From contig OZ025664.1 of NCBI GenBank assembly GCA_964019335.1, forward strand, positions 372,001 through 436,000: a stretch of DNA of 64,000 nt. The letters are read 5' to 3'. A program made the position numbers and the translations under genes. This stretch comes from Diplonema japonicum. Taxonomy: Eukaryota > Protista > Euglenozoa: Diplonemea. The notes below the pieces were generated by a model that was not told the origin of the DNA, did not search any database, and saw nothing but the letters and a program-made list of their open reading frames with translations. Positions within the stretch are counted from its first letter, which is position 1. Every line of letters begins with the position of its first letter. Below are positions 32,911-62,889 of this stretch, one piece after another.

Positions 32911-35900
32911 ATGGGTGGGGCAACCTTGCACATTGCCATTGTCTTGTTGGCGGTGCTGTCGAGCTCGGTTCACGGCAAGACGCGAACAGACTGTTTGCCG
33001 GAGAGGTACCAGCCGAGCAATGTGACCATCACGAAAGGGATCAAAAAAAAACCGGAGCTGTACGTAAACGGTGAACTGTTTGAAGTAAAGGGCATTGGGT
33101 ACTCCCCCATCCCACCAGGGAAGAACACTCTGAACGAACAGTTCGATTTCTTCACCTCAGACAGAGACTACATCTGGAAACGAGACGTCCCCATCATCGC
33201 CAACATGGGCGCTAATGTCATCAGAACATGGTCATGGGACGCGACGCTGGACCACACAGCGTTTCTCAATCTCTGCCACCACCATGGGCTGAAAGTTTTG
33301 ATCCCGTTCGGTGTCACCCCTATCGAGTACCCTGACCTAGCTGACCCCGCAACACGTCACCAGCTTATGACAGATTGGAAAGCGTTTATCCATAAAGTAC
33401 GCAACCACCCAGCCCTGTTCGGTTACATGATAGGTAACGAGCTTAACGAAGCCTACGCAGGCCAGTTCGAAGAGCTCTTCTCAGCCGTGAACGCGATGGT
33501 CGCCCTTCGTGATGAGTACGATTCGAAAAAGCACCCCATCACCCTCCCCTTCAGCGACAACAACTTCATGGAGGACCTCGTCGAGAAGTACTACCCCTGG
33601 CTCAACATCGACTTCTGGAGCCTTCAGATCTACCGTGATGCCATCAACATCGATTCCGTGTCGTCTGAATATTCCGAGCTCTTCCTTGAGCCCGACTTGA
33701 TGTCGGTCAAGAAGGGCATGTTCCACCAGCTTCCCATCAAACCCCTCATCTTCACCGAGTATGGTATTGACGCGCTTGACGGCGACACTTGTGAGTCGTG
33801 GAACAGATCGTGCACTACGAAGGAAGTGACACGTCTCATGCTCAGCGACACGCCTGTCTCGCAAAACGAGACCAAGCAAGCCCTCGGATTCTGCAATAGG
33901 TACTCTGCCATCAGGAACGGCACCTACAACACCTCTGCATACGTTAACGGTGGCGTCATCATGGAGTACGTTGATGAGTGGTGGAAGGGGACCTTCCCCG
34001 ACGTGCGTCGCGAAGAGTGTCCCAACCAGCGAACCGACGTCCACACCTACTGCGCATCGAACATCAACAAACACAACAACAACACAAAAGCCGACTTTCT
34101 CCACGAGGAGTGGCTCGGTCTCTTCAGACAGATCCCCACCCTCGCCGACACCAACAAGCTTGTCGAAGACATGGACTACTGCATCCACCCACGTCTTGCG
34201 CAGTGCGTCATGGGGCTTGCTTTCGAGCTTAAAAGCAGTGCCGACCTTGACTGCATGGGCTTGGTGCTGCAATGCAACCAAACTTTCAACCAGCACCCTG
34301 TCCCGCAGTACTGCGCCACAAAAAAGACGCTTTGGAACAACTACATCATGATGTGGATCGTGCCGCCCATGCTGATTCTGATTGCTGTGATTGTCATCTT
34401 GCGTGTATACCTCAAGCGAGGGTGGAGGTCCCTGATGATGATGGACTACCAGCAACTGAACGACCACTCACCCGAACTCGAACCCGAGCAGGAAGGCCCC
34501 TCAGCCAACGAGCAAGGTGTGGGTGTAAACGGCGAAGCGGCGAAGTCTGCAAATCCCGACATCATCGACGTGTCGAAGAACGAACCCCGCTGCGACAACT
34601 TGCTAGGGGGCATCGACCCCAAGATCATCGAAAAGGAATGTAAAGTACTGGAAAATATCATCAACCAAGCCTTCTGGAAGTACACGGCAGCACGCAGCGA
34701 GGAAAGCACGTTCACCAAATGGGCGGAACCAAAGGTGAAGGGCGCCAACAGCGTCAACGTGGAACAGTTTTTCGAACAACATCTCAGAAATAAGCCCTGC
34801 CCGCACTTCGTGCTCGCACAGAAGAAGATATACCACGCTGTGTACGATCAGTTCTCGAGGCACATTATGGATACGAAGTTGAGTGACCGTACTGACAAGG
34901 ACGTAGAATGTAAAAGGTTGATGGGACGCGCAGTGCGTATAGTGTTCGAGAAGTACACAGAAGGATACTATCTGTACTTGGACAGGCCCAGTCCCGAGGA
35001 GAACGATGTGAAGAAGAGCATTGAGATCCTGTCTCTGTACATGCTGACCCAGCAGTGGTCGGGAACCATCAACCATGCTCCAGAGAAGATCTGCGAGCTG
35101 CTCAACTGGTCACTGCAGTACTTCGAGAACATCTCCAAAAAGGACGCTGTGATCCTGGATAGCAACTGCGAAAGACTAAAAAAGCGCTGGGAAGAACGCA
35201 CGGGTTGGGTAATCAACTACCACTATGGGTTGGTGGAGATCATCAGGACCTACTGTCTCAAGGTGCAGGAGGGGTTCTCCTTCGACGATATCAACAGCGA
35301 CTCGATCTACATTAGGAAGAGACTGATGAAACAGAACAAGGATGTAGGCAGCAAAAGCTCAAGCGATTTTCTGGAAACACCTTCCTGTTTGCAGTCCGAA
35401 ACAATCATCGGTACTGAGGGCGATCTGCTTCCCACGAAATCCAACATCCAAAACCGACGCTCTGCCATCCATGGAACGCACTTGGAGTACAACTCTGCAT
35501 GCCGACCAGAAGAAGTAGTAACAAGCTATAGTGCGAACCACTTCTTCAAATCGAGGCTGCCCGAAGGGAACACCGATGGAAAGTTCTTACCAAAGAACAT
35601 CGCGTTCCCTCAGAGGGGTGGTGTGTTCTCGCTTCTGCTGAACTACCAGTGGTTGATCAGGTACTTGGTGTGGCAGAACATGCTGGCGTCGGTAATGCAG
35701 CCCGAGACAGTGTCCACGCCGGAGTGCAAGCAGACGTTTGTCGTGAGCGGGTTGGGTATTGCCGATGCTACCATGTGCGCTGTTTTCTGTTTCTGCCACA
35801 GGATTACGTTGGGGAGGTTCAAGAGGAGACTGTTGTTCGAAACATTCTTCTACACAGGAAGCTGTATCATGGTGTGGATCACTTTTGTGTTCTCGGACTA

Positions 35901-38900
35901 CCTGAGTTTCGTGTGCCATTACCTTAACGGCAGCTGCCAAGGGAACAAAGGCCCCGACGTGCTGGGCTTTACTATTGACGTCCCGACGGTTTACCTTTTG
36001 ATTGCTGTTCTCCTCGCCATCATTGACGAGGTGCGGCTGTTTGCCTGGACGTACCAATCCAACGCCATCAAGGGACGCTTCAAGTCCATGGACCATTACC
36101 GCTCCGTCCGCATAGGCTACGCAATCTGCTGCATAACCGGGATAGTCATCTTCATCATCCTCAAAGCGTCTTCCTTTTACTCAGTATGAAAACATTAGGA
36201 AAAGGAAAAAGAAAAAACTCAAAATAATCAGTTCAACGCCTGGAGCTGGTGGCCGCACATGGACAGCGACCTGCTAGTCATCATTCTTCCGATTGGGTGT
36301 CTTGCGGGCGGGCATTGCCTTTCGAGGGTGCTCCCGAAGTGCTCGTCGACGTACCACCGCAGTGCTAGAAATGATTTGGAGATCAAGGAAGAGTCGCGTT
36401 ACGTGGTATGCAATGGAAAGAAACGAGAACAATCAAACAGGCACTGAACATTGTGTTCTGGGGCATGTTCTTCGCGCTCAACTGGATGCTGGCGTTCTAC
36501 GTCCTGATACCTGCTGTTAACAACATAGGGTTGGATATCTGTGACTGTTCCGACGCAGAGTATAGCTTGGACCAGACACAAGTCGAGAACTGCAAGGGAA
36601 AGGTGAAGTTGATGTGTGATGTGGGCGTCATCTTTGTCTGGATTAGCGCATACCTCGTGTCGTTCGTTTTCCTCTACGCGGTGTTCGTGACACTGCTACT
36701 CTTGTTCGGCATAGCGAGGGCAAAGTACATCCGTGTAGGGAACGTTCAGGACTGGAACGATGTAGAGAGGTTCTGGGGGACTATTCTGAAGAGGTCACTA
36801 CCCGAGGTTTCTAAGTCGCTTACACCGCTTGAACCTACACCGCAGCAGATCAAAAACGGAGACTACGTGACTGACGACAGGTTCGTGATGAACGAGGGGC
36901 TGTCTCTGCATCAGTCCACAGTATGGAACTGTTTAGTAGACTCCTTGTACCGTGACGATCTGTTGTCTTCAGACGAGATGGACGCGCTAAAGGTGTCCAT
37001 CAAGACGGACCTCGAGTCCCGCCAGCTTGTCCCGAACTTCAGACTCAAACCCCGTTCCAAAGAAGCGCAGCGCCGTGTCATCTCCTACATGTGGGGCCTC
37101 GAGTCCCTTGCTGCTCACGACGGCCACCATGAGAAAGCCATTCTCAAAGGCGGCGACTTCACATCAGGCCTGCGCAAGTCGCATCGTGTCTACGCCATGC
37201 CCTCCTTCACTACGATCGTCCCTATTTACAACGAGGCCATCTTGCTGTCGAGAGAGAACATCAAAAGGATGCGCGACCACGGCAAGTCGGCTAAAAGGAT
37301 CACCGAGCTTGAATACCTTGCGTTAGTCTACTCCGCTGAGTGGCAGAACTTCGCCCAGAAGATGGACAACAAGCACTCCGGTTCCTGGATCCTCGACAAG
37401 AAACAAAAGGAAAACCTTGCGAACGAGCTGCTCCACGCCTTCATCGGCCAGGAGCACCCCAAGCCCCTTGAAGACAAGAAGGATGCCCAACTGATCAGGG
37501 ATATCGAGCTGTGGGCTTCTATGAGGGGCCAAACCTTGGCGAGGACCATCAAAGGCCTGTGTAACATCAGGCTGGGGATCGAACAGCTGTGTGTTCTGGA
37601 GGAACCAGACATGACCCCAAGGCAGATCATGATGCTTGTCGCCAGGAAGTACCAGATACTCATCTCACATCAGACGTTCAACTTGTCACTGGTTGGGCAA
37701 AACGACGGGAAACTGTCGCAACAAGAAAACGCCCTCGTGCACATGTTCCGCACAGAGAAGTATTTGGAAGTGGTAACAAACGATGACACGGTGTTCCAGT
37801 CGCACTGTTTGAAGCTGAGGGACGTGCTCTTGTACCCGCCAAAGGAGAACGACATACGTCACAGGGACCCGCGGAAGACAATGGAAGCTATTGAAAACGA
37901 AACAGCGAAGTTGCAAACGAAAATCAACTTGCAATTTGACACTTTAATGAAATGGTACGGCAACAAGTCCACAGTATTGCCTGAGGGTACTATGGTCAGG
38001 ATGAACAACACTGGCACGTGGGAGAAGAAAAACCAGAAAGACATCGGCCGCCCTGACATGAAGAAACTCTTCGGCGGGAAGTGGCAAGAGGGTGTTGTCA
38101 TGAAGTTCACACCGGCACCAGTTGTCTCAGAGCTTCGTAAGTTCACACCCGACGAACTGCAAAGCGTGCAGGAAAGCAGAAGGCTTTCACCGTCCCTCGA
38201 CACGGCGAAGAAGCTACAGCTGCTCGGGTTAGAGGTGTGCCCTAGTGACAATGGGGTGCTTGTGAAGCGCGACACAGGAATCGTCTTTTCCTTCAATGTC
38301 ACAGGCTACACCCTAACCAAGTACGAGATCAAAATGGAAAACACGAACACTACCGTGAAGAACGAACCGACCACTGACAACTTCCTTGAAGCCATGTGCG
38401 ACACGGGCAAAGAGGTGAGCTTCACCTTCACGAGGATCCCCGGCTGGGGGGATTCGAATATGGGGAAGTACGAAATTAAACTGGACAACGGCGACACGCA
38501 GAAAGACGTGTTGTTCGACCGTGTCGAGCCCTTCCCGTGGACGTGCCAGACAGTGCAACGTGTGTCGCCGCTTAAGATCGGTGAGGGCAAAGCGGAGAAC
38601 CAAATCCACGCGCTTCCGTTCGCAAGGGGCGACGTGCTTCAAGCAATGGACATGAACCAGTACGCCACATCGGACCAGGGCATGAAGATTCCATTTCTGC
38701 TGAACGACTTCTTCTCAACCCCAGACGAAAAGACGCTCTCTGCTTGCATGAACGGTGACGACGGTTGGGACCACAACATCCTCATCCCGCCTTTTAGGAT
38801 CGTCGGTTTTCCCGAAAACTGTTACACAAGGGATCTTTCTATGGTAGGGGAACTGATGGGTGCTGCTGAATGGTGCTTCGTCACTATCAACCAACGTGTG

Positions 38901-41625
38901 TTGTCATGGCCGTTAAGGACACGAGCGCATTACGGACACCCCGACTTCTTTGATGGGTACTGGGCGAGGACAAGAGGAGGGACGTCAAAGGCATCGTTGA
39001 AAGTAAACACCAATGAAGATATCTTCGCGGGGTATGAGATGCTTGGCCGTGGGGAGCGTGGTAGCTATGTGGAGTTCCTCGAGGTTCACAAAGGCCGTGA
39101 GACGGCGTTCCCCAACGCATATGGTTTCGAGGTGAAGCTGGCTCAGGGCGCGGCTCAGCAGATTCGATCGTTAGACATCTACATGCTGAACAGAAAACTC
39201 GACTTGTTCTCAAGATTTTCCCTGTTCTACGGGTCGTTGGCCTTTTACGTGACGAACTTCATCATGGCGATATCCATCAATTACTACATCCTGTCTATAG
39301 TGCTTTTCGCGATGAGCGGGGTCTCATACCATCAGCTTGGGCTGATGGACGCCATCATCGCCATCCCATGGTTGCTGCAGGTGGGCTACGTCCTTGCCAT
39401 CCCTATGATCGTTGAACTCGTTCTGCAGAAGGGTTTCCTTCGTGGAGTGGTGGAGTTCATAGTGACCCTTCCCATTGCCGTCTTCTTCTTCATCTTCCAC
39501 ATGAGGACCAAAACATACTACTTTGGAAAGGGGCTCCTGGTCGGCTCTGGTGGTTATGTGGCGACCGGGCGTGGGTTTGGCTTGGAACGGCAGAACATGA
39601 AGGAGATGTACCAAACGTACTCAGAAAGTCATTTCCTTGAAGGTTTGAAAACAAAAAAAAAGAAAGTGGCAAATAAGAAAAAAAAATAAAGGTTTCCTAA
39701 TCTTGCTCTGTCTCATAATGTACGCGGTGTACGGGTCAGACCCAATTGTCCCTTATTTGGCGAGGGTATGGCGAGATTTTTTTTTTTTTTTATAAAAAGA
39801 AAAGTATAATAACACCACCACACTCACAGACCTTTACAATCATTCTCATCACCATCTCGTGGTTGTGGGCGCCGATCATTTTCAACCCTATGCCCACCAC
39901 GCAGGAGTTGCAGAGCGACCTATCTGCCATGATGGACTGGATATCGACAAAGGTGCGGCACTGCACCGTGGAAGAGGCTGACAAGATGGACAGAGCGCTT
40001 CAAAGCGTTCAGAAAGCACGCGAGCTGACCCTCGAGTACAACATGACAGAGGAGACGACAGAAGAGAAAGACGCTTCAAATGCCAACGAAACGACCGTCA
40101 TCGGGGATGCGGACAGCAGCTCAGGGTACGACTCGGACTCCGGCGGGGCGGTGGGAAGAAACCCCGAGGAGGAGAAAAAAAAATGGTTCGCACTGCTCTA
40201 CCATAACGAACACACATCGTTCACCTGGAAACCTGGCATCAAGAAGAACCCGTTGGTCCCAAACATAGACGCCAGAAAGAAAGAGGTGTTCGTCAGTGTG
40301 GAGGGCCAGGTATTCTAAAAAAAAAGATTTTTTTTTAAACAAATAAACCCTGTTCACAGTGCGACATACCGAATATCGGGTTGGATTTCAAGGAACAGGT
40401 GCTGAAAGAGTTGAAGACCAAAGAGAAACCTACCGACACGGAGCTGGAACAGAAGAACATCATGGTTCTTTCTTTCAAAGACGAAGCAGCTGTTAAAGGG
40501 CTTGGAGATCTTCCAAAAGAGTTCGACCTCGCCGTGGGCAACAACATGCGGGCCAGGGTCAAGGTTGAAACCTTCGCCCAATGGAGCCAGAACCGTATCC
40601 CGTCGTTCAAGAGCTACGAAGAGATGGTGGCGCAATACTGGAAAACGGAGAACGGGAAGCGCAACACGGCAGACGAGTCTTGGAAAGCATGGTACATCCA
40701 GTACGTCGTCTTCAAAATGTGGCAGTCGGAGGACGAACACTCCAAGACCCCAGTCCAGTTTATCAGCACAACCATTATAAAAGTATACCTGTATGCAGAG
40801 TTCTACCTCCCTTGGGTATTGATCTCCTTCGCATTCTGGAACATGGAGTCGCTGTGGCTTGTTATTGTTGGTGTGTTCCTTGCAGGGCTGTTCTACGTCA
40901 TCGACTACAACACCAGAGACAGGCACGACTACCCGCAACTGATCAAGGCCATCACGCTTCTCATGCTGCCGTTTGCTTACATGTACTATAGCACCGCGCT
41001 TATCACCGCGAAGGAACTGTTTTGGTCAGCTGTGTTCTACGTCTTGGGGCTTACCATAATAGCAAGAATCGCAATGGGCGTACGAAACATCGAAGCGAGG
41101 GACGTTGGCGTGGACGCTGAGACTAGTGGAAACAGTATCGAGGATGCTAGGAGGAGCGATGTCACCCGCTTGAACAACAAAGAAGCACGGGAAGCAAAGG
41201 TCTTTTACAAAAGACTGATGATTTGGCCCGGGTGGATCGCCTTCAGGAGCATCACACCGTTCTGCATTATGGTGCTTCTTGCTATCGGGAATTTCCTTGC
41301 AGTTGCGCTGTCTACCTGGCTAACTGCAATGTTGTATAATGGAGCCGTTGCCGAGGCATGGCGAAAAGCGTATTTTTCTTCTTCTTCAGCCACTCCCCCA
41401 CCACCTTCTGACTCTCCTGGACCAAGAGGGTTTTCCAATGTAGTTCTGGAAACAGCGCCGTCGCCCATTGCGCAGGCTACAATCGATGCTGTTAACACAT
41501 CCACAGGGAAAAAAATTAAGAAGAAGGTCAATAGGGGTAAGCAGGCACATGGTGTACGATCGGCACGCAATGTGACAACTATTCAGGAAAGCGACAACAA
41601 TGCGGGTGTTGAGGAGGCTTTCTAA
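32911..41625 (+). CDS. GT48 beta-1,3-glucan (callose/paramylon-type) synthase with N-terminal signal peptide and clan GH-A glycoside hydrolase domain (~2,822 aa); exons 32911-36183, 36232-36405, 36441-39642, 39692-39765, 39830-40309, 40360-41625
   Basis: GT48 motifs: MPSFTTIVPIYNE, WASMRGQTLARTIKG, GEGKAENQ.HA..FARG..LQAMDMNQ, HYGHPDFFD, TRGGTSKAS, NEDIFAG, YVATGRGF, SHFLEG, SWLWAPIIFNP, plus many TM helices. N-terminal TIM-barrel motifs: KGIGYSP, RDVPIIANMGANVIRTW, IGNELN, FTEYG, GGVIMEYVDEWWK. Five GT-AG introns (36184-36231, 36406-36440, 39643-39691, 39766-39829, 40310-40359) join five ORF-track pieces in frame. Confidence 0.9.
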
Positions 41626-55889: not shown

Positions 55890-56578
55890 ATGGCAAACGT
55901 CCCGAGTAAAAAGCACTTCTCTGACATCCAGCACCTGCCTAGCTATAACAACAGGCTGCCGATACTGGCAGACCTGCTCACCACTCTGTGCGCGAAGAAC
56001 GACAAGTCTGGAGGGAACACTAAGGAATCGGTGTTCTCCACCTCGAAGCCGGCTCTGGTGAGTGTGAAGGATTACCTGGTGCGGATGTGCAAGTACGGCC
56101 ATTGCAGCCCAACGGTCTTCATCTGTATGGCAGTGTATGTAGACCGTTTGTGTGACAAGACTGGCATAGAGCTGAACAGCTCTAACATCCATAGAATCCT
56201 AGTGGGTGCGTTTCTTATATCAGCGAAGCTTAATGACGATGTGTATTACAGCAATAAGTACTACGCCAGCATTGGAGGTGTTTCGCTCAAAGAGACAAAT
56301 GAAATAGAAGCAGCATTTTTGGAACAGACTGACTGGGATATGTATGTATCTGAAAGTGAGTACAAAATGTATATGAGTGATTTGAAGCTGGTGCCTCCAC
56401 AGCGGGTGCAGGGGGTAGAAGACGCAGGGCAGCAGATTTCTGGAAACGAGGGTCAGAATTCTGCCGGGGCCACGCATGTTGCTGGGACACCTGTGAATGC
56501 TTTGCGGTACCGAAGGGGTTCAGCCAAGCCGTCTCTCCTTCCCCCTTCTAAGCCTGTTATTAAACCTGCTTCCAGACG
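55890..56578 (+). CDS. PHO80/PREG (U-type) cyclin, 3' end lost in assembly gap
   Basis: SVKDYLVRMCKYGHCSPTVFICMAVYVDRL, NIHRILVGAFLISAKLNDDVYYSNKYYASIGGVSLKETNEIE. Confidence 0.92.
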
Positions 56579-56778
56579 NNNNNNNNNNNNNNNNNNNNNN
56601 NNNNNNNNNNNNNNNNNNNNNNNNNNNNNNNNNNNNNNNNNNNNNNNNNNNNNNNNNNNNNNNNNNNNNNNNNNNNNNNNNNNNNNNNNNNNNNNNNNNN
56701 NNNNNNNNNNNNNNNNNNNNNNNNNNNNNNNNNNNNNNNNNNNNNNNNNNNNNNNNNNNNNNNNNNNNNNNNNNNNNN
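56579..56778. other. Assembly gap (200 N)
   Basis: Run of N bases. Confidence 0.99.
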
Positions 56779-57498
56779 AGCACCCTGACCTGGTCTGCAC
56801 GCACAAATTCCCACAAACGTTCAATGTTTCAGAATTTCACTTTTGAAATTATAAAAGCAGCAGTTACACCTTAGGGAAAACTCCCGAGTTTTACAATTTT
56901 TTTTTTTTTTTTCATTTTACAGTAAATAGTAATTTCGCTCTGAGGGGTGGCCGACGTTATTTTTTCTGCTTTTTTTTTTTGAGACAAAAAAGAACTGGAC
57001 GGAGACTAAAGGAAAAGGGGGGAATAAAGGGGGGCAGGTGGAAAAAAAAGAAGGTCTTTTTACCTCCCCCCCCCCCCCCCCCTCCTGTTTGTTCTTCTCC
57101 ATGCCTGTCTTCTCAAAAATCCTCCCATACCCTTGCAATTGCTTTCCCCCCCCCAACCTCCCCGCTTTTTCGGGGTTATTTCTTTGGGATTACGGCAAGT
57201 AGTACCCAGTAGAATAGTGCTGCAAGTTGTTAAAAATCTATGGGAATTTCCCCCCCTCCCCCCCCTCTTTCTTCTTTTTTTTTTCAGTATACCACCTCTT
57301 TTTATTTTTTTTTCTCCTGTGTGCTGCCATCTTCATTTGATAGGCAATACATGAAGGGGAAGGTAAATTTTTTTTTTTTTAAAGAACAACAAAAAAAAAA
57401 AGAAAAAAAAAAAACAAAAACATGTATGCCATACTCTTATAGTATGATACCTTGGGGAAGGGGGGGAGTTTTTATTTTATTTTATTTTTGGAGAAAAC

Positions 57499-57643
57499 TG
57501 CTAACTAGACCCTTGCGATCTCTCTCTAATTCCATGATCTGAAGGCAGCCAAACCAGGCACCCTTTTTTGCTATCGAGAGATCCAGAGTCGCGCTTCGAG
57601 GGCGGGCTTTGTGCAGTTCTACAAACTTAGGGTCTAGTTAGCA
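57499..57643. repeat. 145-bp element with perfect 15-bp terminal inverted repeats (MITE-like or fold-back)
   Basis: TGCTAACTAGACCCT (57499-57513) and its exact reverse complement AGGGTCTAGTTAGCA (57629-57643) bracket a GC-balanced island in homopolymeric DNA. No obvious target-site duplication. Confidence 0.7.
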
Positions 57644-57911
57644 CCTTTATTATTATTTTTTTTTTTTTCCTTTACACCTGCTCTTTCCCCCCCCCCCTCC
57701 ATTTTTTTTCAATAATACAATGTTACCCTAGTACAAAAAAAAGAAGAAAAAAGAGAAAAATGATGTGAAGACACAGCGAAAATCTTTTGGGCTTGCTTTT
57801 TTTTTTCTTCTTCTTTCCCCCCCCCTTTTTTTTTCCTGGGCATTCCCCTGGGCTTATTCCCCCCCCTTCCCCTCCTCCCTATTCATGGCTGTGGTGTTAG
57901 TTGATTTATAC

Positions 57912-57947
<36 letters not shown>

Positions 57948-58648
57948 CTTGTACCCTTTTTTTGCGGCTACGATAGCAACAGAATTCACAGGTAACATTC
58001 TGCCAGAATGGTTTTGCTTCTACTTTTTCTCATTCTCTTCGTGCAAGGAATAGAGAAGAAGAGGGGAGTGGGGGAGGGTGGATGGAAGAATTCCCCTCCG
58101 TCTTTTCACATAATTTTTTAAATTATCCAAACGAAAAAAAAAAATGGTAGGGAGGGGTGGGGAGATGACAGTAAAGCGAAACGGGAGAAAAAAGAAGGGG
58201 AAAAAAAAAGGGAAAGAACGTCCTCTTTCTCTTTTTTTTTTCCTTTTTTTTCCCCCTTCTCCTCCCTTCTTATTTTTTTTTCTTTTTTTTTTTTTTTGCA
58301 ACTTCCCTGCTCCCCTTTGTCCGTCAAGCGAAAATGAAAGAAGGGAAAGAAAAATACAAAAAAAAAAGGAGGGGGAAAGAAAATACTTTACACAAAAAAA
58401 AGGGGGGGGGTTTTTTAAATTGTCGGTAAACCTTAGAATGAAAAAAAAAGGAGAAAAAAAAATGATTGAGACAATTGGGTGTTCCTCACACAATGGTAAA
58501 AGGAATGTAAACCCGATTTTGCACATCATCGCAACCCCGACACTCTCTTTTTTACAAAAACTTTTTTTCTTTACCTTTTTATATTTACATGCTTTAGCTT
58601 AGGCATGGCGCGTGTCTTGAATTTTTTTTATTCTTCTTTTCTCCGCTG

Positions 58649-58696
<48 letters not shown>

Positions 58697-59092
58697 AACA
58701 GTGGTACCCCCTCTCGTGTCACCATCGGACAAAAAAAAAAAAAAAAAAAAAATACGGTGTTATTTTTTTTTTTTTTTATCTCACTATTCAGAAATCTTCA
58801 CTCCGGAAGCCCATTATCTTATTGGTAAGGACTCATAATTTTGATTGTTTTGGGGGCTATTTTTTTTTTCTTTTTTTTTTTTTCCATCCAACACTCAAAT
58901 CATATCAACTAATGCCAACGTCGAAGAAGGAAGAAGAGAATCTTCTGCCCGCCACTAGCCGCGTAGGCTGAAGCATGCGCCCCTTCTGTGCTGATGTTGT
59001 CACTTAAAACACCAAAAGAATTCCCGTTCTTTTCGAGTCACCAGAGTGACTCAGTTTTCTGAAAAGTGAGGTAAAATTACTTATTTTCCGCC

Positions 59093-59217
59093 AGATTATG
59101 GCCATTCCTTTCACTCTCGAACCCTTTTTTTTTTTTTTTTTTTTTTTTTTAAACCCTCCGGGTCCTCGGGCAAAAAAAATACCCCGATTCTCGAGTGAAA
59201 ATTATGGCTTATAATCT
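59093..59217. repeat. Imperfect ~30-bp inverted repeat
   Basis: AGATTATGGCCATTCCTTTCACTCTCGAA (59093-59121) versus TTCTCGAGTGAAAATTATGGCTTATAATCT (59188-59217). Confidence 0.6.
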
Positions 59218-59354
59218 GTTGGCAAAGAAATAGCTATTCTCCTTTTTCTTTTTCTTTTTTTTTTTTTCTTCTTTTTTTTTTTTTTTTTTCCATACTCACG
59301 CAGCAATGTAGGACAATTTAAATAGAAGGGCTAAAAACACTTTTTTTTTTTTCC

Positions 59355-59385
<31 letters not shown>

Positions 59386-59861
59386 ACGATTTCCGAAACA
59401 TATAAAAAAAAAAGGGGGGGAAGATGCCATTTCTATTTGAAGAAAAGAGAGTCCACAAAGCTGAATGGGTAGTTCAAAAAAGAAAATCACCCCCCCCTCC
59501 TACATCTCTACTAACACGCACACAAAGGCCCTAGGCAAAAATAAATAAAAGAACCTACGAACGAAAAAAAAAAAAAAAAATGGTGCACAATTTGTGTGAA
59601 GTTCGCCGTGTAATTAACTACTCCCATAAACCCCCCTCCTCTACATCACGATATTCTTTTCTTTTTTTTTTTTCTTCATATGTTTCTTTTATGTTATTCA
59701 TCACTAAAGTGATTTTTTTTTTTTTTTTTTTCCCTCTTAATCCCCCCTTCCCCTACTTGAGAAAGGTGCTCCCTTTGGCTGAATAAGAGCGGGCAAAACG
59801 GCCAACAGGAAGTTTCTTCTTTTCTTTTCTTTTTTTTTTTTTCTCTGCATCCCACTTTTGG

Positions 59862-59908
<47 letters not shown>

Positions 59909-61155
59909 AACTGCAACAATTGGAGGCCACGGTGCCACAAAGCAGTGTTTTTCTTTTTTTTTTCTTCTTCTTTTTTTTTTTTTTCTGTTCTTAAATGAGG
60001 GGGGCGAACGAAACGAGATGGGACCAATAAACAGAAAAGGTGAGACACATCTTTTCCCCCCCCTTCTTTTTTTTAGTTTCCCTTTTTACACGAGGTAGAA
60101 AAAAAATTATATATATAGCATTGTGGATCAAAGCAAAAACGCGGGGGGAAAAAATCTTTGGGCAGTGCATAAATTGTTTTTTTTTTTTTTTTTACTCGAC
60201 TCAATTTTTACTGCTGGACCATGAGGAAACGGGGACGAGACACGTCATGTCTGAGGTGGGGCCGCACAGATTAGAAGCTCACCTCGACACATCGTTTGAC
60301 TACAAATACCCATGTTGTTCATGGCACACTTGAAGCCAACGTGTGGTGGAGTACTGAGCGCCATATGACTTGTGTCACCTTGACGTTTAAAAAGAATTCT
60401 TTTTTTTTCTTCTTCTTTTTTTTTTTCTCTTTCTTCTCTCCCTTGCTCCCCCAAACAAACGTTTTTTTTTTTTTTTTTTTTTTTTTTTTCTTTCTTTTTT
60501 TTTTTTTATTTGTTTCTGTTTCCCCCCCTTTTTTTTAAAATTATATAGCTGAACCTCTGGACCTCGTTCCTTCCATCATAGTGAATTTTTTTTTTCTTCA
60601 TTTCTTTTTTTTTTTTTTTTTTTTTTTAAATCTGCCCTTAAAAATAACTCAGACTTACCCACCCACCCACTCCCCCCCTTCTTTTTGGAATAAAGAAAAA
60701 AGAAGAAAAAAGAAATTAATGACATATCTAAAGCGATCCACCTTTCTTTTTTAAAAAATCTTTTTTGATACTGGCAAGAATGACCGACTTGTGTCATCTG
60801 AACCTATTCCATGCCCTTTAGTATCAGTAAATAGAGGGAAAAAAAAAAGAAAAGAAACCGGATTTTTTTTTTTTTTTTTTTTGCTTGTACAAAAAAATCG
60901 GAGCAATTCATTTACAATTATTGTTTTTCATGTTCTGGCAAAAAAAAGGGGGAACGGGGGGAACGCTTAGATACCCCCCCCTCCCAGAAATTAATATTTT
61001 AGAGGGAAAAAAAAAAGGAAAAAGAAAATGGGCCCCGAAGAACTTTTCTCTTTAGTAAGGCACCAGAAATTTTTATTTTTATTATTTTTTTTTTTTTTAG
61101 AAAGGAGAGCGGGGGGGAAACCCCCCCAGTCCCTCACACAACAAAGAAAACCAAT

Positions 61156-61197
<42 letters not shown>

Positions 61198-61875
61198 CCC
61201 CTTTATTTTCCCTGGCTATATGATACCCCCTCCCTTTCCCCTTCTTTCTCTCTCCCCACTGCTTCTTTTTTTTATTCTCTCCTTTTTATCAGTAGGAAGG
61301 CACCAGGTAATTCGTTCAAAGTAAAAAAAAACAAAAAAAAAAAAAAAAAAAAAAGCATGGTCGTATTTTCCCAAAAGTCTTAAACCGTTTGGAGAAAGCA
61401 GAAAATCCTTAAAATAAGTTTTTAAAAGTTTTGTACTACTTTTTGACTTTTTAGTATTGTCAGGACTAAAAGCTAATTTGATGCAATGGTAAAAAGAAAT
61501 ACCGCCCTGAGTTCTGTGGGACAAGAAAACCAACCCTATTTATCGAAAATCGCACAATTTTTTGGAGTAGGGAAACGAAAAATTTTAAAAAAAAGAAAAA
61601 AAGAAAAAAAAAAAAAAGGAAAACCCCGGTTTTCCACCACAAAACGTCTTAAGACCTTTGCGAAAACGAGACCATATATATCCTTATTTCTCTTTTTTTT
61701 TTTTTTTTTGTCCTCCACCCCCTGCTCCCCCATCTCTTCTTCTTCTATCCACATACCTCGGTTTTATCACCCCTCCCTCTATTCCACGTATCCTTTAGTT
61801 ACAATTTCTTCGATTTTCCCCCCCCCACCCGTCCGGTACTCAATAAACAAAAGCAAGGCAGGAGGGGGGGGGGGG

Positions 61876-62889
61876 GATCTTCGCACCGTGGCACACAGGG
61901 ACCCGGCTGAGTGTATTCTGTGTTCACAGTATGTAGTGGTTAACCTAGGGGTGTTCATCACCGCGTCCGAAATAGCGGCACTGTGCTTGTGCAGCAAACG
62001 GTGTCTTGATGTCTGGGGCTCCCTCTTGAGAAGGAAGCTGGCTCGGCACGGAACGGGGTTTATAGCAATGCTGCATGCAGCACTCGACGAAATAGAGGTC
62101 GAAGCCCGAAAGGAACCCGTCATCATTCTCCCTGGATACGAAATCAGCGAGCTTTCCATAAAGCCCCCAGGATCTTTATACACCTGGAATTCTTGCAGAC
62201 AGGTAACTGGAAGAGAAGCCGCTTGGCTATCACACGGAAAACGAAAATCGGACAACAAGGAAGTCACCCTTTGGATGCACCACGTACCTTGTGGGATGGG
62301 AACCTCGGTGTGGATATCTATACTTTTTTTAAAAAACGGTGGTGTGGAATGGGCGTTTCAACTAGCAGAGGTCGATCCCTCAGCTGATCCAGAAACATCA
62401 ACAGTGTTCTTAGGTTACCCTTTACGTGCATCGGTGGCCCGTCTTCGTGCCTTGAAAGACCCTGAAAACACAGTGTCTACCAGCACAGAGCACTACACAA
62501 CATATCAGGTTTCTTTTGAAGCTTCCGAAGATGGTGGGCATGCTGCTTTGCTGCGTCTAGGCGTGCGTTGCTCTATTGGGGTGTTGAGCTTGTATATTAA
62601 ATCAGAGACAGAAGATTTCCTTTCGTTCCTCAAAACCCAGCAGGTTCCTGAGCTCTTTACCATTGACACTGAGACTAAGGCGCTTGTGACACACAAAGGT
62701 GTGACTCGGTACACAACAGGCTCCTGCACCGCGACGCCTTCCCCTCCAGAGACATTCCACGATGTTATTTATCTGAAGGCCGTGCGGCTGCAGCGCTACG
62801 CCACGAGACATGAGGCAGATATGTCTGCGGCGCTCGTTTCTCTGATTCCTTATGGCATTCTCTCGTGGGTGCCTGCTTCGTGCAGATGA
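61876..62889 (+). CDS. Hypothetical protein with N-terminal F-box-like motif; start codon not resolved
   Basis: Coding-like composition begins after the polyG at ~61875. VVVNLGVFITASEIAALCLCSKRCLDVW resembles an F-box. The 61486-61875 part of the ORF-track call is homopolymer translation. Confidence 0.55.
   Translation, partial: DLRTVAHRDPAECILCSQYVVVNLGVFITASEIAALCLCSKRCLDVWGSLLRRKLARHGTGFIAMLHAALDEIEVEARKEPVIILPGYEISELSIKPPGSLYTWNSCRQVTGREAAWLSHGKRKSDNKEVTLWMHHVPCGMGTSVWISILFLKNGGVEWAFQLAEVDPSADPETSTVFLGYPLRASVARLRALKDPENTVSTSTEHYTTYQVSFEASEDGGHAALLRLGVRCSIGVLSLYIKSETEDFLSFLKTQQVPELFTIDTETKALVTHKGVTRYTTGSCTATPSPPETFHDVIYLKAVRLQRYATRHEADMSAALVSLIPYGILSWVPASCR

What the first reader, a model, noticed from the sequence alone, without database searches (positions are those of the whole stretch)
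32911..41625. Single-polypeptide glucan synthase fused to a luminal glycoside hydrolase/transglycosylase
Seen: signal peptide, then a (beta/alpha)8-type domain with both clan GH-A catalytic glutamates (GNE, codon 33439; TEYG, codon 33757), a Cys-rich cap, a TM helix (~34345-34410) and a complete GT48 synthase with the ED motif (39015-39020). The ORF track splits it into five pieces. Known: fungal FKS and plant callose synthases lack such a domain and rely on separate GH72/GH17 remodellers. Euglenozoans store beta-1,3-glucan made by GT48 enzymes. The motif order resembles GH72/GH158/GH2/GH5. Inference: the chain is polymerised in the cytosol, extruded, then cut, primed or re-ligated by the tethered domain on the far side, giving built-in control of chain length or branching. 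Related architectures may already exist among Euglena GSL proteins, so novelty needs checking.
Basis: partly seen in the sequence, partly recalled or inferred. Interest (0 to 1): 0.82.

Follow-up and report, generated by a model that had tools for sequence, protein, structure and literature searches.

The report
Diplonemid paramylon synthase with glucanase-like head
This is a real six-exon gene of the marine protist Diplonema japonicum that joins a sugar-cutting or sugar-rejoining domain to a beta-1,3-glucan synthase, but the same layout is already reported for the Euglena storage-glucan synthase EgGSL2, so it is a new member of a known kind.

Summary
Window 32911-41625 (+) is one gene of six exons and five short GT-AG introns, about 2,822 aa. 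It encodes a signal peptide, a GH72-like clan GH-A domain with both catalytic glutamates, one TM helix, and a complete GT48 beta-1,3-glucan synthase.

Full-length transcript-derived proteins from Flectonema and Hemistasia match all pieces in order. Three paralogues in this genome carry head and synthase in single uninterrupted ORFs.

The novelty claim fails. The same head-plus-GT48 layout occurs in Bodo saltans, two prokinetoplastids, several diplonemids, Eutreptiella and Euglena gracilis. The E. gracilis protein has C121-W122, as published for EgGSL2. [quoted passage not shown] A GT48 tree places the window gene with the diplonemid counterparts of EgGSL2.

The head's mechanism remains untested. 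This scan had already flagged the paralogues on other contigs of this genome.

The parts
32911..32976 (+). Start codon and predicted signal peptide (residues 1-22)
   Evidence: Hydrophobic stretch at residues 2-20, score 1.85. Orthologue N-termini also start with a hydrophobic leader. No signal-peptide predictor was available, so the cleavage site is read by eye.
33052..34245 (+). GH72-like clan GH-A (beta/alpha)8-type head, residues about 48-445
   Evidence: PF03198 E 1.3e-10, 41.5 bits, above the cut-off. Gas2 2w62 E 2e-9. Profile of 12 fused proteins: Gas2 4e-11, 9fz9 1e-8, GH158 3e-6.
33439..33441 (+). E177, predicted acid/base Glu of the G-N-E motif
   Evidence: Aligned to the Gas2 G-N-E; the Gas2 mutant chain 2w61 has Q there. 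Invariant in 12 of 12 fused proteins. Present in 34 of 37 GH-A-type rows; the other 3 are gaps or truncations.
33757..33759 (+). E283, predicted nucleophile Glu of the T-E-Y-G motif
   Evidence: Invariant T-E-x-G in 12 of 12. Present in 35 of 37 rows, 2 gaps. At least 90% conserved in the 35-row family alignment. Its role is inferred from the clan GH-A pattern, not tested.
34345..34401 (+). TM helix between head and synthase (residues 479-497)
   Evidence: Hydropathy 2.86, the highest in the protein. Four basic residues lie in the 10 residues after it. An equivalent helix is present in the Euglena, Eutreptiella, Flectonema and Apiculatamorpha proteins.
34402..36183 (+). Rest of exon 1: synthase N-terminal region, presumed cytosolic, plus the first TM helices
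   Evidence: Same uninterrupted ORF as the head. Matches residues 487-1098 of Flectonema P0001 at 1e-123, which runs on into GT48. No PDB match.
36184..36231 (+). Intron 1, 48 nt, GT..AG, contains an in-frame stop
   Evidence: Sequence; orthologue collinearity; splice-site print.
36232..36405 (+). Exon 2, 58 codons, one TM candidate
36406..36440 (+). Intron 2, 35 nt, GT..AG
36441..39642 (+). Exon 3: TM helices plus the GT48 catalytic domain
   Evidence: PF02364 E 2.9e-101. FKS1 7xe4 E 1.8e-48. Genome six-frame hits at window 37170-37679 and 38568-39650.
37617..38576 (+). About 320-aa stretch inside the GT48 domain where FKS1 has about 100 residues
   Evidence: The FKS1 alignment breaks between query 392 and 713 (chain 976-1078). 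Kinetoplastid-type orthologues lack query residues about 466-692. No Pfam match.
39015..39020 (+). E-D of the conserved N-E-D-I-F-A-G motif
   Evidence: aligned with the FKS1 N-E-D-I-Y-A-G; E and D invariant in 12 of 12.
39643..39691 (+). Intron 3, 49 nt, GT..AG, phase 1
39692..39765 (+). Exon 4, 74 nt, one TM helix
   Evidence: Matches Flectonema residues 2218-2246 at 66% identity; hydropathy.
39766..39829 (+). Intron 4, 64 nt, GT..AG
39830..40309 (+). Exon 5, 160 codons, end of the GT48 profile
   Evidence: PF02364 profile 665-737 at E 0.029, below the cut-off on its own. Orthologue match.
40310..40359 (+). Intron 5, 50 nt, GT..AG
40360..41625 (+). Exon 6, 421 codons plus stop: C-terminal TM bundle and tail
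   Evidence: Orthologue match up to 41376; four TM candidates.

Best explanation
The gene is the Diplonema japonicum counterpart of Euglena gracilis EgGSL2, the GT48 beta-1,3-glucan (paramylon) synthase.

Shown:
- One six-exon gene encodes, in order: signal peptide, GH72-like clan GH-A domain with an intact N-E acid/base and E nucleophile, one TM helix, and a complete GT48 synthase.
- This layout is shared across diplonemids, kinetoplastids and euglenids.

Inferred:
- The signal peptide sends the head into the lumen of the secretory or paramylon-vesicle system, and the TM helix acts as a stop-transfer.
- The GT48 domain polymerises UDP-glucose on the cytosolic face and threads the chain through its TM bundle, as in FKS1.
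- The tethered head then acts on the emerging beta-1,3-glucan with a retaining mechanism.
- I think endo-cleavage that releases or sizes chains is about as likely as Gas-type transglycosylation that re-ligates them. Sequence cannot separate the two.
For: Gene model:
- Flectonema P0151 (2,843 aa) and Hemistasia P0004 (3,476 aa), both transcriptome ORFs, match the pieces in order with continuous query coordinates.
- 12 of the 150 listed library hits carry both the head and the GT48 exon.

Same genome:
- Paralogues on C83, C86 and C87 have head(s) and GT48 in one uninterrupted ORF.

Orthology:
- In a 28-row GT48-core tree, the window groups with Flectonema, an ENA contig and Hemistasia (100/99). 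The kinetoplastid group is sister (97/96) and the euglenids, including the E. gracilis protein, lie outside.

Link to EgGSL2:
- E. gracilis P0170 shares a 90% cluster with BAX37083.1, named 'beta-1,3-glucan synthase'.
[quoted passage not shown] Mutating them lowers paramylon (passages).

Head likely catalytic:
- G-N-E and T-E-x-G are invariant in 12 of 12 fused proteins.
- No GH-A-type row has a substitution at either Glu.

Substrate:
- Of the three nearest solved families, GH72 and GH158 act on beta-1,3-glucan; the third (9fz9) has no function given.

Context:
- Diplonemids store paramylon (passages citing a paper I could not read).
Against: - No transcript of this species for this gene was found. 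One search listed none among 13 hits in the searched length range, and the library holds only 50%-identity cluster representatives.
- My crude hydropathy count gives 7 TM candidates between the head TM and the GT48 domain. An even number is needed to put both flanking regions in the cytosol, so topology is not settled by my data.
- The two GH81-type paralogues lack the two glutamates I recall as catalytic in GH81 (C86 by alignment; C87 by eye). Their GH-A remnant is also degenerate. A non-catalytic luminal head is therefore viable in this protein family.
- The published C121S/W122L phenotype could reflect misfolding rather than loss of head activity.
Confidence: 0.6

Rival explanations
1. The head is a non-catalytic, lectin-like module. 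It holds or templates the nascent beta-1,3-glucan for triple-helix or granule formation, or is needed only for folding and trafficking of the synthase.
For: - In paralogue C86, the two Glu of R. miehei GH81 (positions 553 and 557 in the 4k35 alignment) align to S and T.
- The GH-A remnant in C86 and C87 has lost the N-E and changed the nucleophile Glu to Asp.
- Sulcionema and Artemidia proteins show the same loss at the acid/base site.
- These synthases are nevertheless conserved across diplonemids.
Against: - In the window gene and all its GH-A-type relatives, both Glu and the preceding Asn are kept from diplonemids to euglenids. This is hard to explain without catalysis.
- Seven further head positions around beta-strand 8 are also invariant.
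Confidence: 0.2
2. The enzyme makes a surface or cyst-wall beta-glucan at the plasma membrane rather than storage paramylon. The head would then work outside the cell, like fungal Gas/Gel wall remodellers.
For: - The signal peptide and TM fit a plasma-membrane location equally well.
- The genome has four GT48 genes, so roles may be divided.
- GH72 enzymes are wall remodellers in fungi (established knowledge).
Against: - The gene groups with the lineage that holds EgGSL2. Papers I read in passages say EgGSL2 is needed for paramylon.
- I know of no beta-glucan wall in diplonemids (recall only, not searched).
Confidence: 0.15
3. Two neighbouring genes: a secreted, membrane-anchored glycosidase and a separate GT48 synthase, read as one by mistake.
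For: - The GT48 Pfam domain starts only in exon 3, after two introns. Intron 1 carries an in-frame stop.
- No same-species transcript was seen.
Against: - Exon 1 runs 594 codons past the head TM. That stretch matches the synthase N-terminal region of orthologues that continue into GT48.
- Orthologue coordinates are continuous across every junction.
- 13 of 13 long relatives carry both Pfam domains.
- Paralogues in this genome are single ORFs.
Confidence: 0.03

Closest known systems
[quoted passage not shown]
   Same: - Same order of parts: signal peptide, GH-A head with G-N-E and T-E-F-G, the conserved D-E-W-W-K and C-P-N motifs, a TM helix, then GT48.
- Same lineage in the tree.
[quoted passage not shown]
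   Different: - The window protein is about 2,822 aa against 2,254 aa, with an extra stretch inside the GT48 domain and a longer tail.
- W122 of EgGSL2 is H here; C121 is kept.
- The gene has short conventional GT-AG introns.
Fungal FKS1/GSC2 and plant callose synthases (GT48)
   Same: The GT48 catalytic core, the N-E-D-I-[FY]-A-G motif and flanking TM bundles.
   Different: The FKS1 and GSC2 chains match only the synthase part. They have no counterpart of the head or of the region after the head TM. That plant enzymes lack a head is from general knowledge.
Fungal GH72 beta-1,3-glucanosyltransferases (Gas/Gel/Phr; PDB 2w62, 8pe2)
   Same: - Best solved match for the fused heads (E 4e-11).
- Pfam PF03198 above the cut-off.
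- The acid/base G-N-E aligns.
   Different: - The relationship is distant.
- The heads are tethered by a TM helix to a synthase rather than carried on free proteins (a GPI anchor for Gas proteins is recalled).
- No X8/CBM43 match in Pfam.
- A profile built mostly from the standalone environmental relatives scores 9fz9 and GH158 above GH72.
GH158 bacterial beta-1,3-glucanases (BuGH158 6pal; GH158(Pro) 9oro)
   Same: Clan GH-A fold family. Matches at 1e-20 and 4e-15 with the broad family profile. They act on beta-1,3-glucan (passages).
   Different: Weaker than GH72 with the fused-head profile (3e-6). Not found with the single window sequence at E up to 1.
S. pombe Bgs3-Ghs2 synthase-remodeller pair (Nat Commun 2026, PMC13612389; abstract read)
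   Same: The same logic: a GT48 synthase coupled to an extracytosolic GH-domain protein placed near the extrusion pore, acting on the nascent chain.
   Different: Two polypeptides rather than one. The partner is GH16 rather than GH72-like. The proposed product is branched wall glucan.

Membership tests
GT48 beta-1,3-glucan synthase | Match to the family profile above the curated threshold | tested here: met
   PF02364 E 2.9e-101, 340.5 bits against a cut-off of 37.2.
GT48 beta-1,3-glucan synthase | Homology to the solved FKS1 catalytic region, with the conserved E-D motif | tested here: met
   7xe4 E 1.8e-48. N-E-D-I-F-A-G lies opposite N-E-D-I-Y-A-G. E-D is invariant in 12 of 12.
GT48 beta-1,3-glucan synthase | TM bundles on both sides of the catalytic domain | tested here: met
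   A crude hydropathy scan finds clusters at cumulative residues 943-1240 and 2075-2720. The exact helix number is not settled.
GT48 beta-1,3-glucan synthase | UDP-glucose-dependent beta-1,3-glucan synthesis | not testable with these tools
   Needs an enzyme assay.
GH72 glucanosyltransferase | Match to the family profile above the curated threshold | tested here: met
   PF03198 41.5 bits against 25.9, but covering only profile positions 23-230 of 314.
GH72 glucanosyltransferase | Acid/base Glu in G-N-E aligned to Gas2 | tested here: met
   Residue-level alignment with 2w62 and the mutant chain 2w61.
GH72 glucanosyltransferase | Nucleophile Glu aligned to the GH72 nucleophile | tested here: inconclusive
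   The single-sequence alignment stops before it. The profile match reaches chain residue 280, but I did not print it residue by residue. The T-E-Y-G motif fits the clan GH-A pattern.
GH72 glucanosyltransferase | Closer to GH72 than to sister clan GH-A families | tested here: inconclusive
   The fused-head profile ranks Gas2 4e-11, then 9fz9 1e-8, then GH158 3e-6. The broader family profile ranks 9fz9 3e-22, then GH158 1e-20, then GH72 6e-18. dbCAN/CAZy was not available.
GH72 glucanosyltransferase | Transglycosylase activity on beta-1,3-glucan | not testable with these tools
   Needs an assay.
EgGSL2-type euglenozoan glucan synthase (head plus GT48) | Signal peptide, GH-A head, TM and GT48 in one polypeptide | tested here: met
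EgGSL2-type euglenozoan glucan synthase (head plus GT48) | Groups with EgGSL2-lineage sequences rather than with the GH81-type paralogues | tested here: met
   Tree: window clade 100/99; with kinetoplastids 97/96; the GH81-type clade is separate at 100/100. The tree has no outgroup and is midpoint-rooted for drawing only.
EgGSL2-type euglenozoan glucan synthase (head plus GT48) | Required for paramylon synthesis | not testable with these tools
   Reported for Euglena only (passages).

The most novel reading that the evidence does not exclude
The head is an active luminal beta-1,3-glucan endo-hydrolase or transglycosylase. It works in cis on the chain leaving the GT48 pore and sets the chain length and crystallinity of paramylon. 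On this reading a synthase-remodeller machine in one polypeptide was already present in the euglenozoan ancestor. The diplonemid paralogues with apparently dead heads (GH81 plus a degenerate GH-A remnant) would be natural loss-of-catalysis variants with a different product or role.
Probability: 0.45. Interest if true: 0.55.

Novelty: new member of a known kind. Interest (0 to 1): 0.3.

Why it matters
How a beta-1,3-glucan synthase controls chain length, release and crystallisation is unsolved. In fungi the remodelling enzymes are separate proteins, and a synthase-remodeller pair was proposed only in 2026 (abstract).

Euglenozoa carry the pair in one chain, so it is a natural system for testing coupling. 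The head-plus-GT48 proteins named here come from Euglena, Eutreptiella, Bodo, two prokinetoplastids and diplonemids. The catalytic pair is invariant in the 12 aligned full-length ones.

This window adds a clean genomic copy and shows the layout is not specific to Euglena. In D. japonicum it sits beside three paralogues with altered or apparently dead heads.

It does not add a new kind of system. The domain was predicted in 2017, according to a 2024 paper that cites that work.

Tried and rejected
1. Structure route. Structure prediction on the 35-row head alignment failed. There is therefore no model, no fold search, and no check of where the head sits relative to the pore.

2. Same-species transcript for this gene. 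One search, a word search with the Flectonema head over lengths 1,564-4,975 aa, gave 13 hits and none from D. japonicum. The library holds only 50%-identity representatives. A D. japonicum transcript was found only for the C86 paralogue (P0171).

3. An idea I held and dropped. I thought the GH81 domain in paralogues C86 and C87 had functionally replaced the degenerate GH-A head, which would have pointed to hydrolysis as the shared function. The two Glu at chain positions 553 and 557 align to S and T. Their catalytic role is my recall. For C87 I read the same region by eye only.

4. The region after the head TM (residues 481-1091) against the PDB gave no match at E up to 1.

5. Literature.
- '9FZ9' gave 0 papers, so the best broad-profile PDB match has no function I can cite.
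- GH72 + GT48 + fusion gave 5 papers, 4 listed, all fungal by title.
- diplonem + glucan synthase + paramylon gave 3 papers. I searched one of them (PMC8219788) and PMC12501133 for passages; neither describes the architecture. The third I saw only in the listing.
- Diplonema papillatum + glucan gave 5 papers. The two I searched by passage have no GT48, GH72 or GH81 mention.
- The GH158 paper has no mention of eukaryotes or synthases.
- Tanaka et al. 2017 (FEBS Lett 591:1360) and the 2020 Protist paper on D. papillatum paramylon are not held. I saw nothing of either and know the 2017 claim only through.
- Supplements were not consulted. I did not ask for any, the task notice says they are closed, and the CAZyme tables of PMC10161547 may list these genes.

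6. TM counting by hydropathy is too crude to fix the topology.

7. I did not build or search a joined spliced CDS or protein. All searches and scripts treated the exons separately.

Full report
**What is there**

Window 32911-41625 (+) lies in a eukaryotic contig, G000:C17. The ORF list shows four long same-strand ORFs: 32911-36189, 36408-39689, 39746-40318 and 40381-41625.

Pfam finds the following:
- Glyco_hydro_72 (PF03198): E 1.3e-10, 41.5 bits against a cut-off of 25.9, at residues 52-256 of the first ORF.
- Glucan_synthase (PF02364): E 2.9e-101, in the second ORF.
- A weak continuation of PF02364 in the third ORF.

The head is the only PF03198 match in the 62.5-Mb genome.

**Gene model**

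I worked exon by exon. I did not build or search a joined CDS or protein.

tblastn of two full-length transcriptome proteins, Flectonema neradi P0151 (2,843 aa) and Hemistasia phaeocysticola P0004 (3,476 aa), gives collinear matches with continuous query coordinates across all pieces.

| Exon | Coordinates | Following intron (nt) |
|---|---|---|
| 1 | 32911-36183 | 48 |
| 2 | 36232-36405 | 35 |
| 3 | 36441-39642 | 49 |
| 4 | 39692-39765 | 64 |
| 5 | 39830-40309 | 50 |
| 6 | 40360-41625 | none |

All five introns are GT..AG and keep the frame. Summing the exons gives about 2,822 codons.

Exon 1 alone holds the head, the TM helix and 594 further codons. These further codons match the N-terminal synthase region of the orthologues. 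The head is therefore physically part of the synthase ORF before any splicing is assumed.

**The head**

- E177 (codon 33439) lies in G-N-E and E283 (codon 33757) lies in T-E-Y-G.
- phmmer against the PDB finds yeast Gas2 (2w62) at E 2e-9, with G-N-E aligned. The mutant chain 2w61 has Q at that position.
- In a 35-row alignment of the head with short library relatives, G175, N176, E177 and E283 are at least 90% conserved.
- 31 of these 35 rows hit PF03198 and 26 of 35 hit Glyco_hydro_2_C. Accessory domains such as the type-9 secretion sorting tail, RHS, Big and CARDB suggest most standalone relatives are bacterial.

The family assignment depends on which profile is used:

| Profile | Best solved matches |
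|---|---|
| Broad 35-row family | 9fz9, an uncharacterised 'GH2 catalytic domain-containing protein', 3e-22; GH158 1e-20; GH72 6e-18 |
| 12 full-length fused proteins | Gas2 4e-11; 9fz9 1e-8; GH158 3e-6 |

The head is therefore a clan GH-A domain best called GH72-like. Formal family membership is unsettled.

**Topology**

Indications that the head is non-cytosolic:
- a hydrophobic leader at residues 2-20;
- the strongest TM helix of the protein at residues 479-497, followed by four basic residues;
- 7 of the 10 exon-1 N-glycosylation sequons, and 12 Cys, in the first 478 residues.

The helix count between head and GT48 domain is not settled by my crude scan.

**The synthase**

Exon 3 matches FKS1 (7xe4) at E 1.8e-48, with N-E-D-I-F-A-G opposite N-E-D-I-Y-A-G. 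The E-D is at 39015-39020.

About 320 residues (exon-3 residues 393-712) lie where FKS1 has about 100. Kinetoplastid-type orthologues lack most of this stretch.

**Who else has it**

- A full HMMER search with exon 1 found 831 proteins at E up to 0.001. Of the 150 listed, 12 carry both the head and the GT48 exon in order.
- A word search with the Flectonema head returned 13 long proteins, and 13 of 13 have both PF02364 and PF03198 precomputed.
- Named sources:
  - Diplonemids: Flectonema, Rhynchopus, Hemistasia.
  - Prokinetoplastids (placement recalled): Papus, Apiculatamorpha.
  - Kinetoplastid: Bodo saltans CUI14841.1, 'glucan synthase-like protein, putative'.
  - Euglenids: Eutreptiella gymnastica, Euglena longa, Euglena gracilis.
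- The E. gracilis protein P0170 (EG_transcript_73) shares a 90% cluster with BAX37083.1, 'beta-1,3-glucan synthase'. It has the same head motifs and C121-W122.

**Already in print**

[quoted passage not shown] It also reports that C121S/W122L strains have low paramylon. I could not read Tanaka et al. 2017 itself.

Other papers, read in passages, name EgGSL2 as the paramylon synthase. The D. papillatum genome paper mentions paramylon and beta-1,3-glucanases but not GT48, GH72 or GH81 in its main text. I did not consult its supplements.

**Orthology**

I built a maximum-likelihood tree of the GT48 C-terminal core (28 rows, 377 columns).
- Rows left out: redundant 90%-cluster members, and the truncated P0001, P0002 and P0003.
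- There is no outgroup, so the tree is midpoint-rooted for drawing only.

Results:
- Window, Flectonema, an ENA contig and Hemistasia group at 100/99.
- That group is sister to the Bodo/prokinetoplastid group at 97/96.
- The euglenids lie outside.
- The GH81-type proteins form a separate clade at 100/100.
- C83 and P0131 sit on long branches of uncertain place.

The order fits vertical descent from the euglenozoan ancestor.

**Paralogues in this genome**

There are four GT48 loci.

| Locus | ORF | Layout |
|---|---|---|
| C83 | 2,922 aa, uninterrupted | About 185 N-terminal residues, a TM, a GH-A head (S-N-E and S-E-Y-G; E 4e-31 to the window head), a TM, then GT48 |
| C86 | 3,278 aa | Signal peptide, GH81 domain, degenerate GH-A remnant (E 5e-7 to the window head; N-E lost, nucleophile Glu now Asp), TM, GT48 |
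| C87 | 4,943-aa open frame | Same order of parts as C86 |

In C86, the two Glu at positions 553 and 557 of R. miehei GH81 align to S and T. Their catalytic role is my recall.

GH81-plus-GT48 proteins were found in 7 of 7 hits. Six come from diplonemids, including D. papillatum KAJ9444635.1 'putative callose synthase 8' and a D. japonicum transcript that is 100% identical over the searched region. The seventh is an unnamed ENA contig.

This scan had already flagged these paralogues on other contigs. Note s1-856408 led me to check the GH81 glutamates, which removed an inference I had been building.

**Catalytic pair across heads**

Among 37 GH-A-type rows (window included; many are near-identical cluster members), the N-E is present in 34 and missing only by truncation or gap in 3. 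The nucleophile Glu is present in 35, with 2 gaps. No row shows a substitution. Both are invariant in the 12-row full-length alignment.

**Mechanism**

Shown: the architecture, its conservation, the intact catalytic pair, and homology to beta-1,3-glucan-active families.

Inferred: luminal placement, action on the nascent chain, and the kind of reaction.

The apparently dead heads in paralogues keep a lectin-like role open. The strict conservation in this lineage favours catalysis. The fungal Bgs3-Ghs2 pair (abstract) is the nearest functional analogue acting in trans.

**Verdict**

On novelty, this is a new member of a known kind. Interest is modest at 0.3.

Noticed in passing
window 4-29571 (+): One open frame of 9,855 codons that may run off the window start. 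Its last third has a VPS13 adaptor-binding domain (E 5e-20) and a C2 domain (E 2e-14). The first 4,990 residues have no Pfam match. It is probably a giant VPS13-like lipid-transfer protein.
   Followed up: partly
window 56001-62000: G+C falls to 34-38%, against about 52% elsewhere in the window.
   Followed up: no
G000:C86:163337-173170 (L017 137-9973): Paralogue: signal peptide, GH81 domain, degenerate GH-A remnant, TM and GT48 in one 3,278-aa ORF. The two GH81 Glu positions align to S and T. The matching D. japonicum transcript protein P0171 is 3,773 aa, so the gene has more exons.
   Followed up: partly
G000:C87:281261-296089 (-) (L014, L015): An open frame of 4,943 codons: GH81, degenerate GH-A remnant, GT48, then more than 2,200 residues with no Pfam match in my scan. 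I did not check that.
   Followed up: partly
G000:C83:50361-59126 (-) (L018 58-8826): Paralogue whose GH-A head (S-N-E and S-E-Y-G kept) is a loop between two TM helices, after a 185-residue N-terminal region without a signal peptide. It sits on a very long branch in the tree.
   Followed up: partly
window 37617-38576: About 320 residues inside the GT48 catalytic domain where FKS1 has about 100. The stretch has no Pfam match and contains two similar short K-Y-E-I-K segments.
   Followed up: no
library proteins P0012-P0150: The head belongs to a large family of mostly environmental, apparently bacterial multidomain proteins, with type-9 secretion tails, RHS and Ig-like domains. Its best solved relative, 9fz9, has no paper in the library.
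   Followed up: partly
metagenome proteins P0020, P0021, P0011 (JGI/ENA contigs up to 80 kb): Head-plus-GT48 proteins of unknown organisms whose nucleophile motif reads [ST]-E-R-G. They form their own long-branched group.
   Followed up: no
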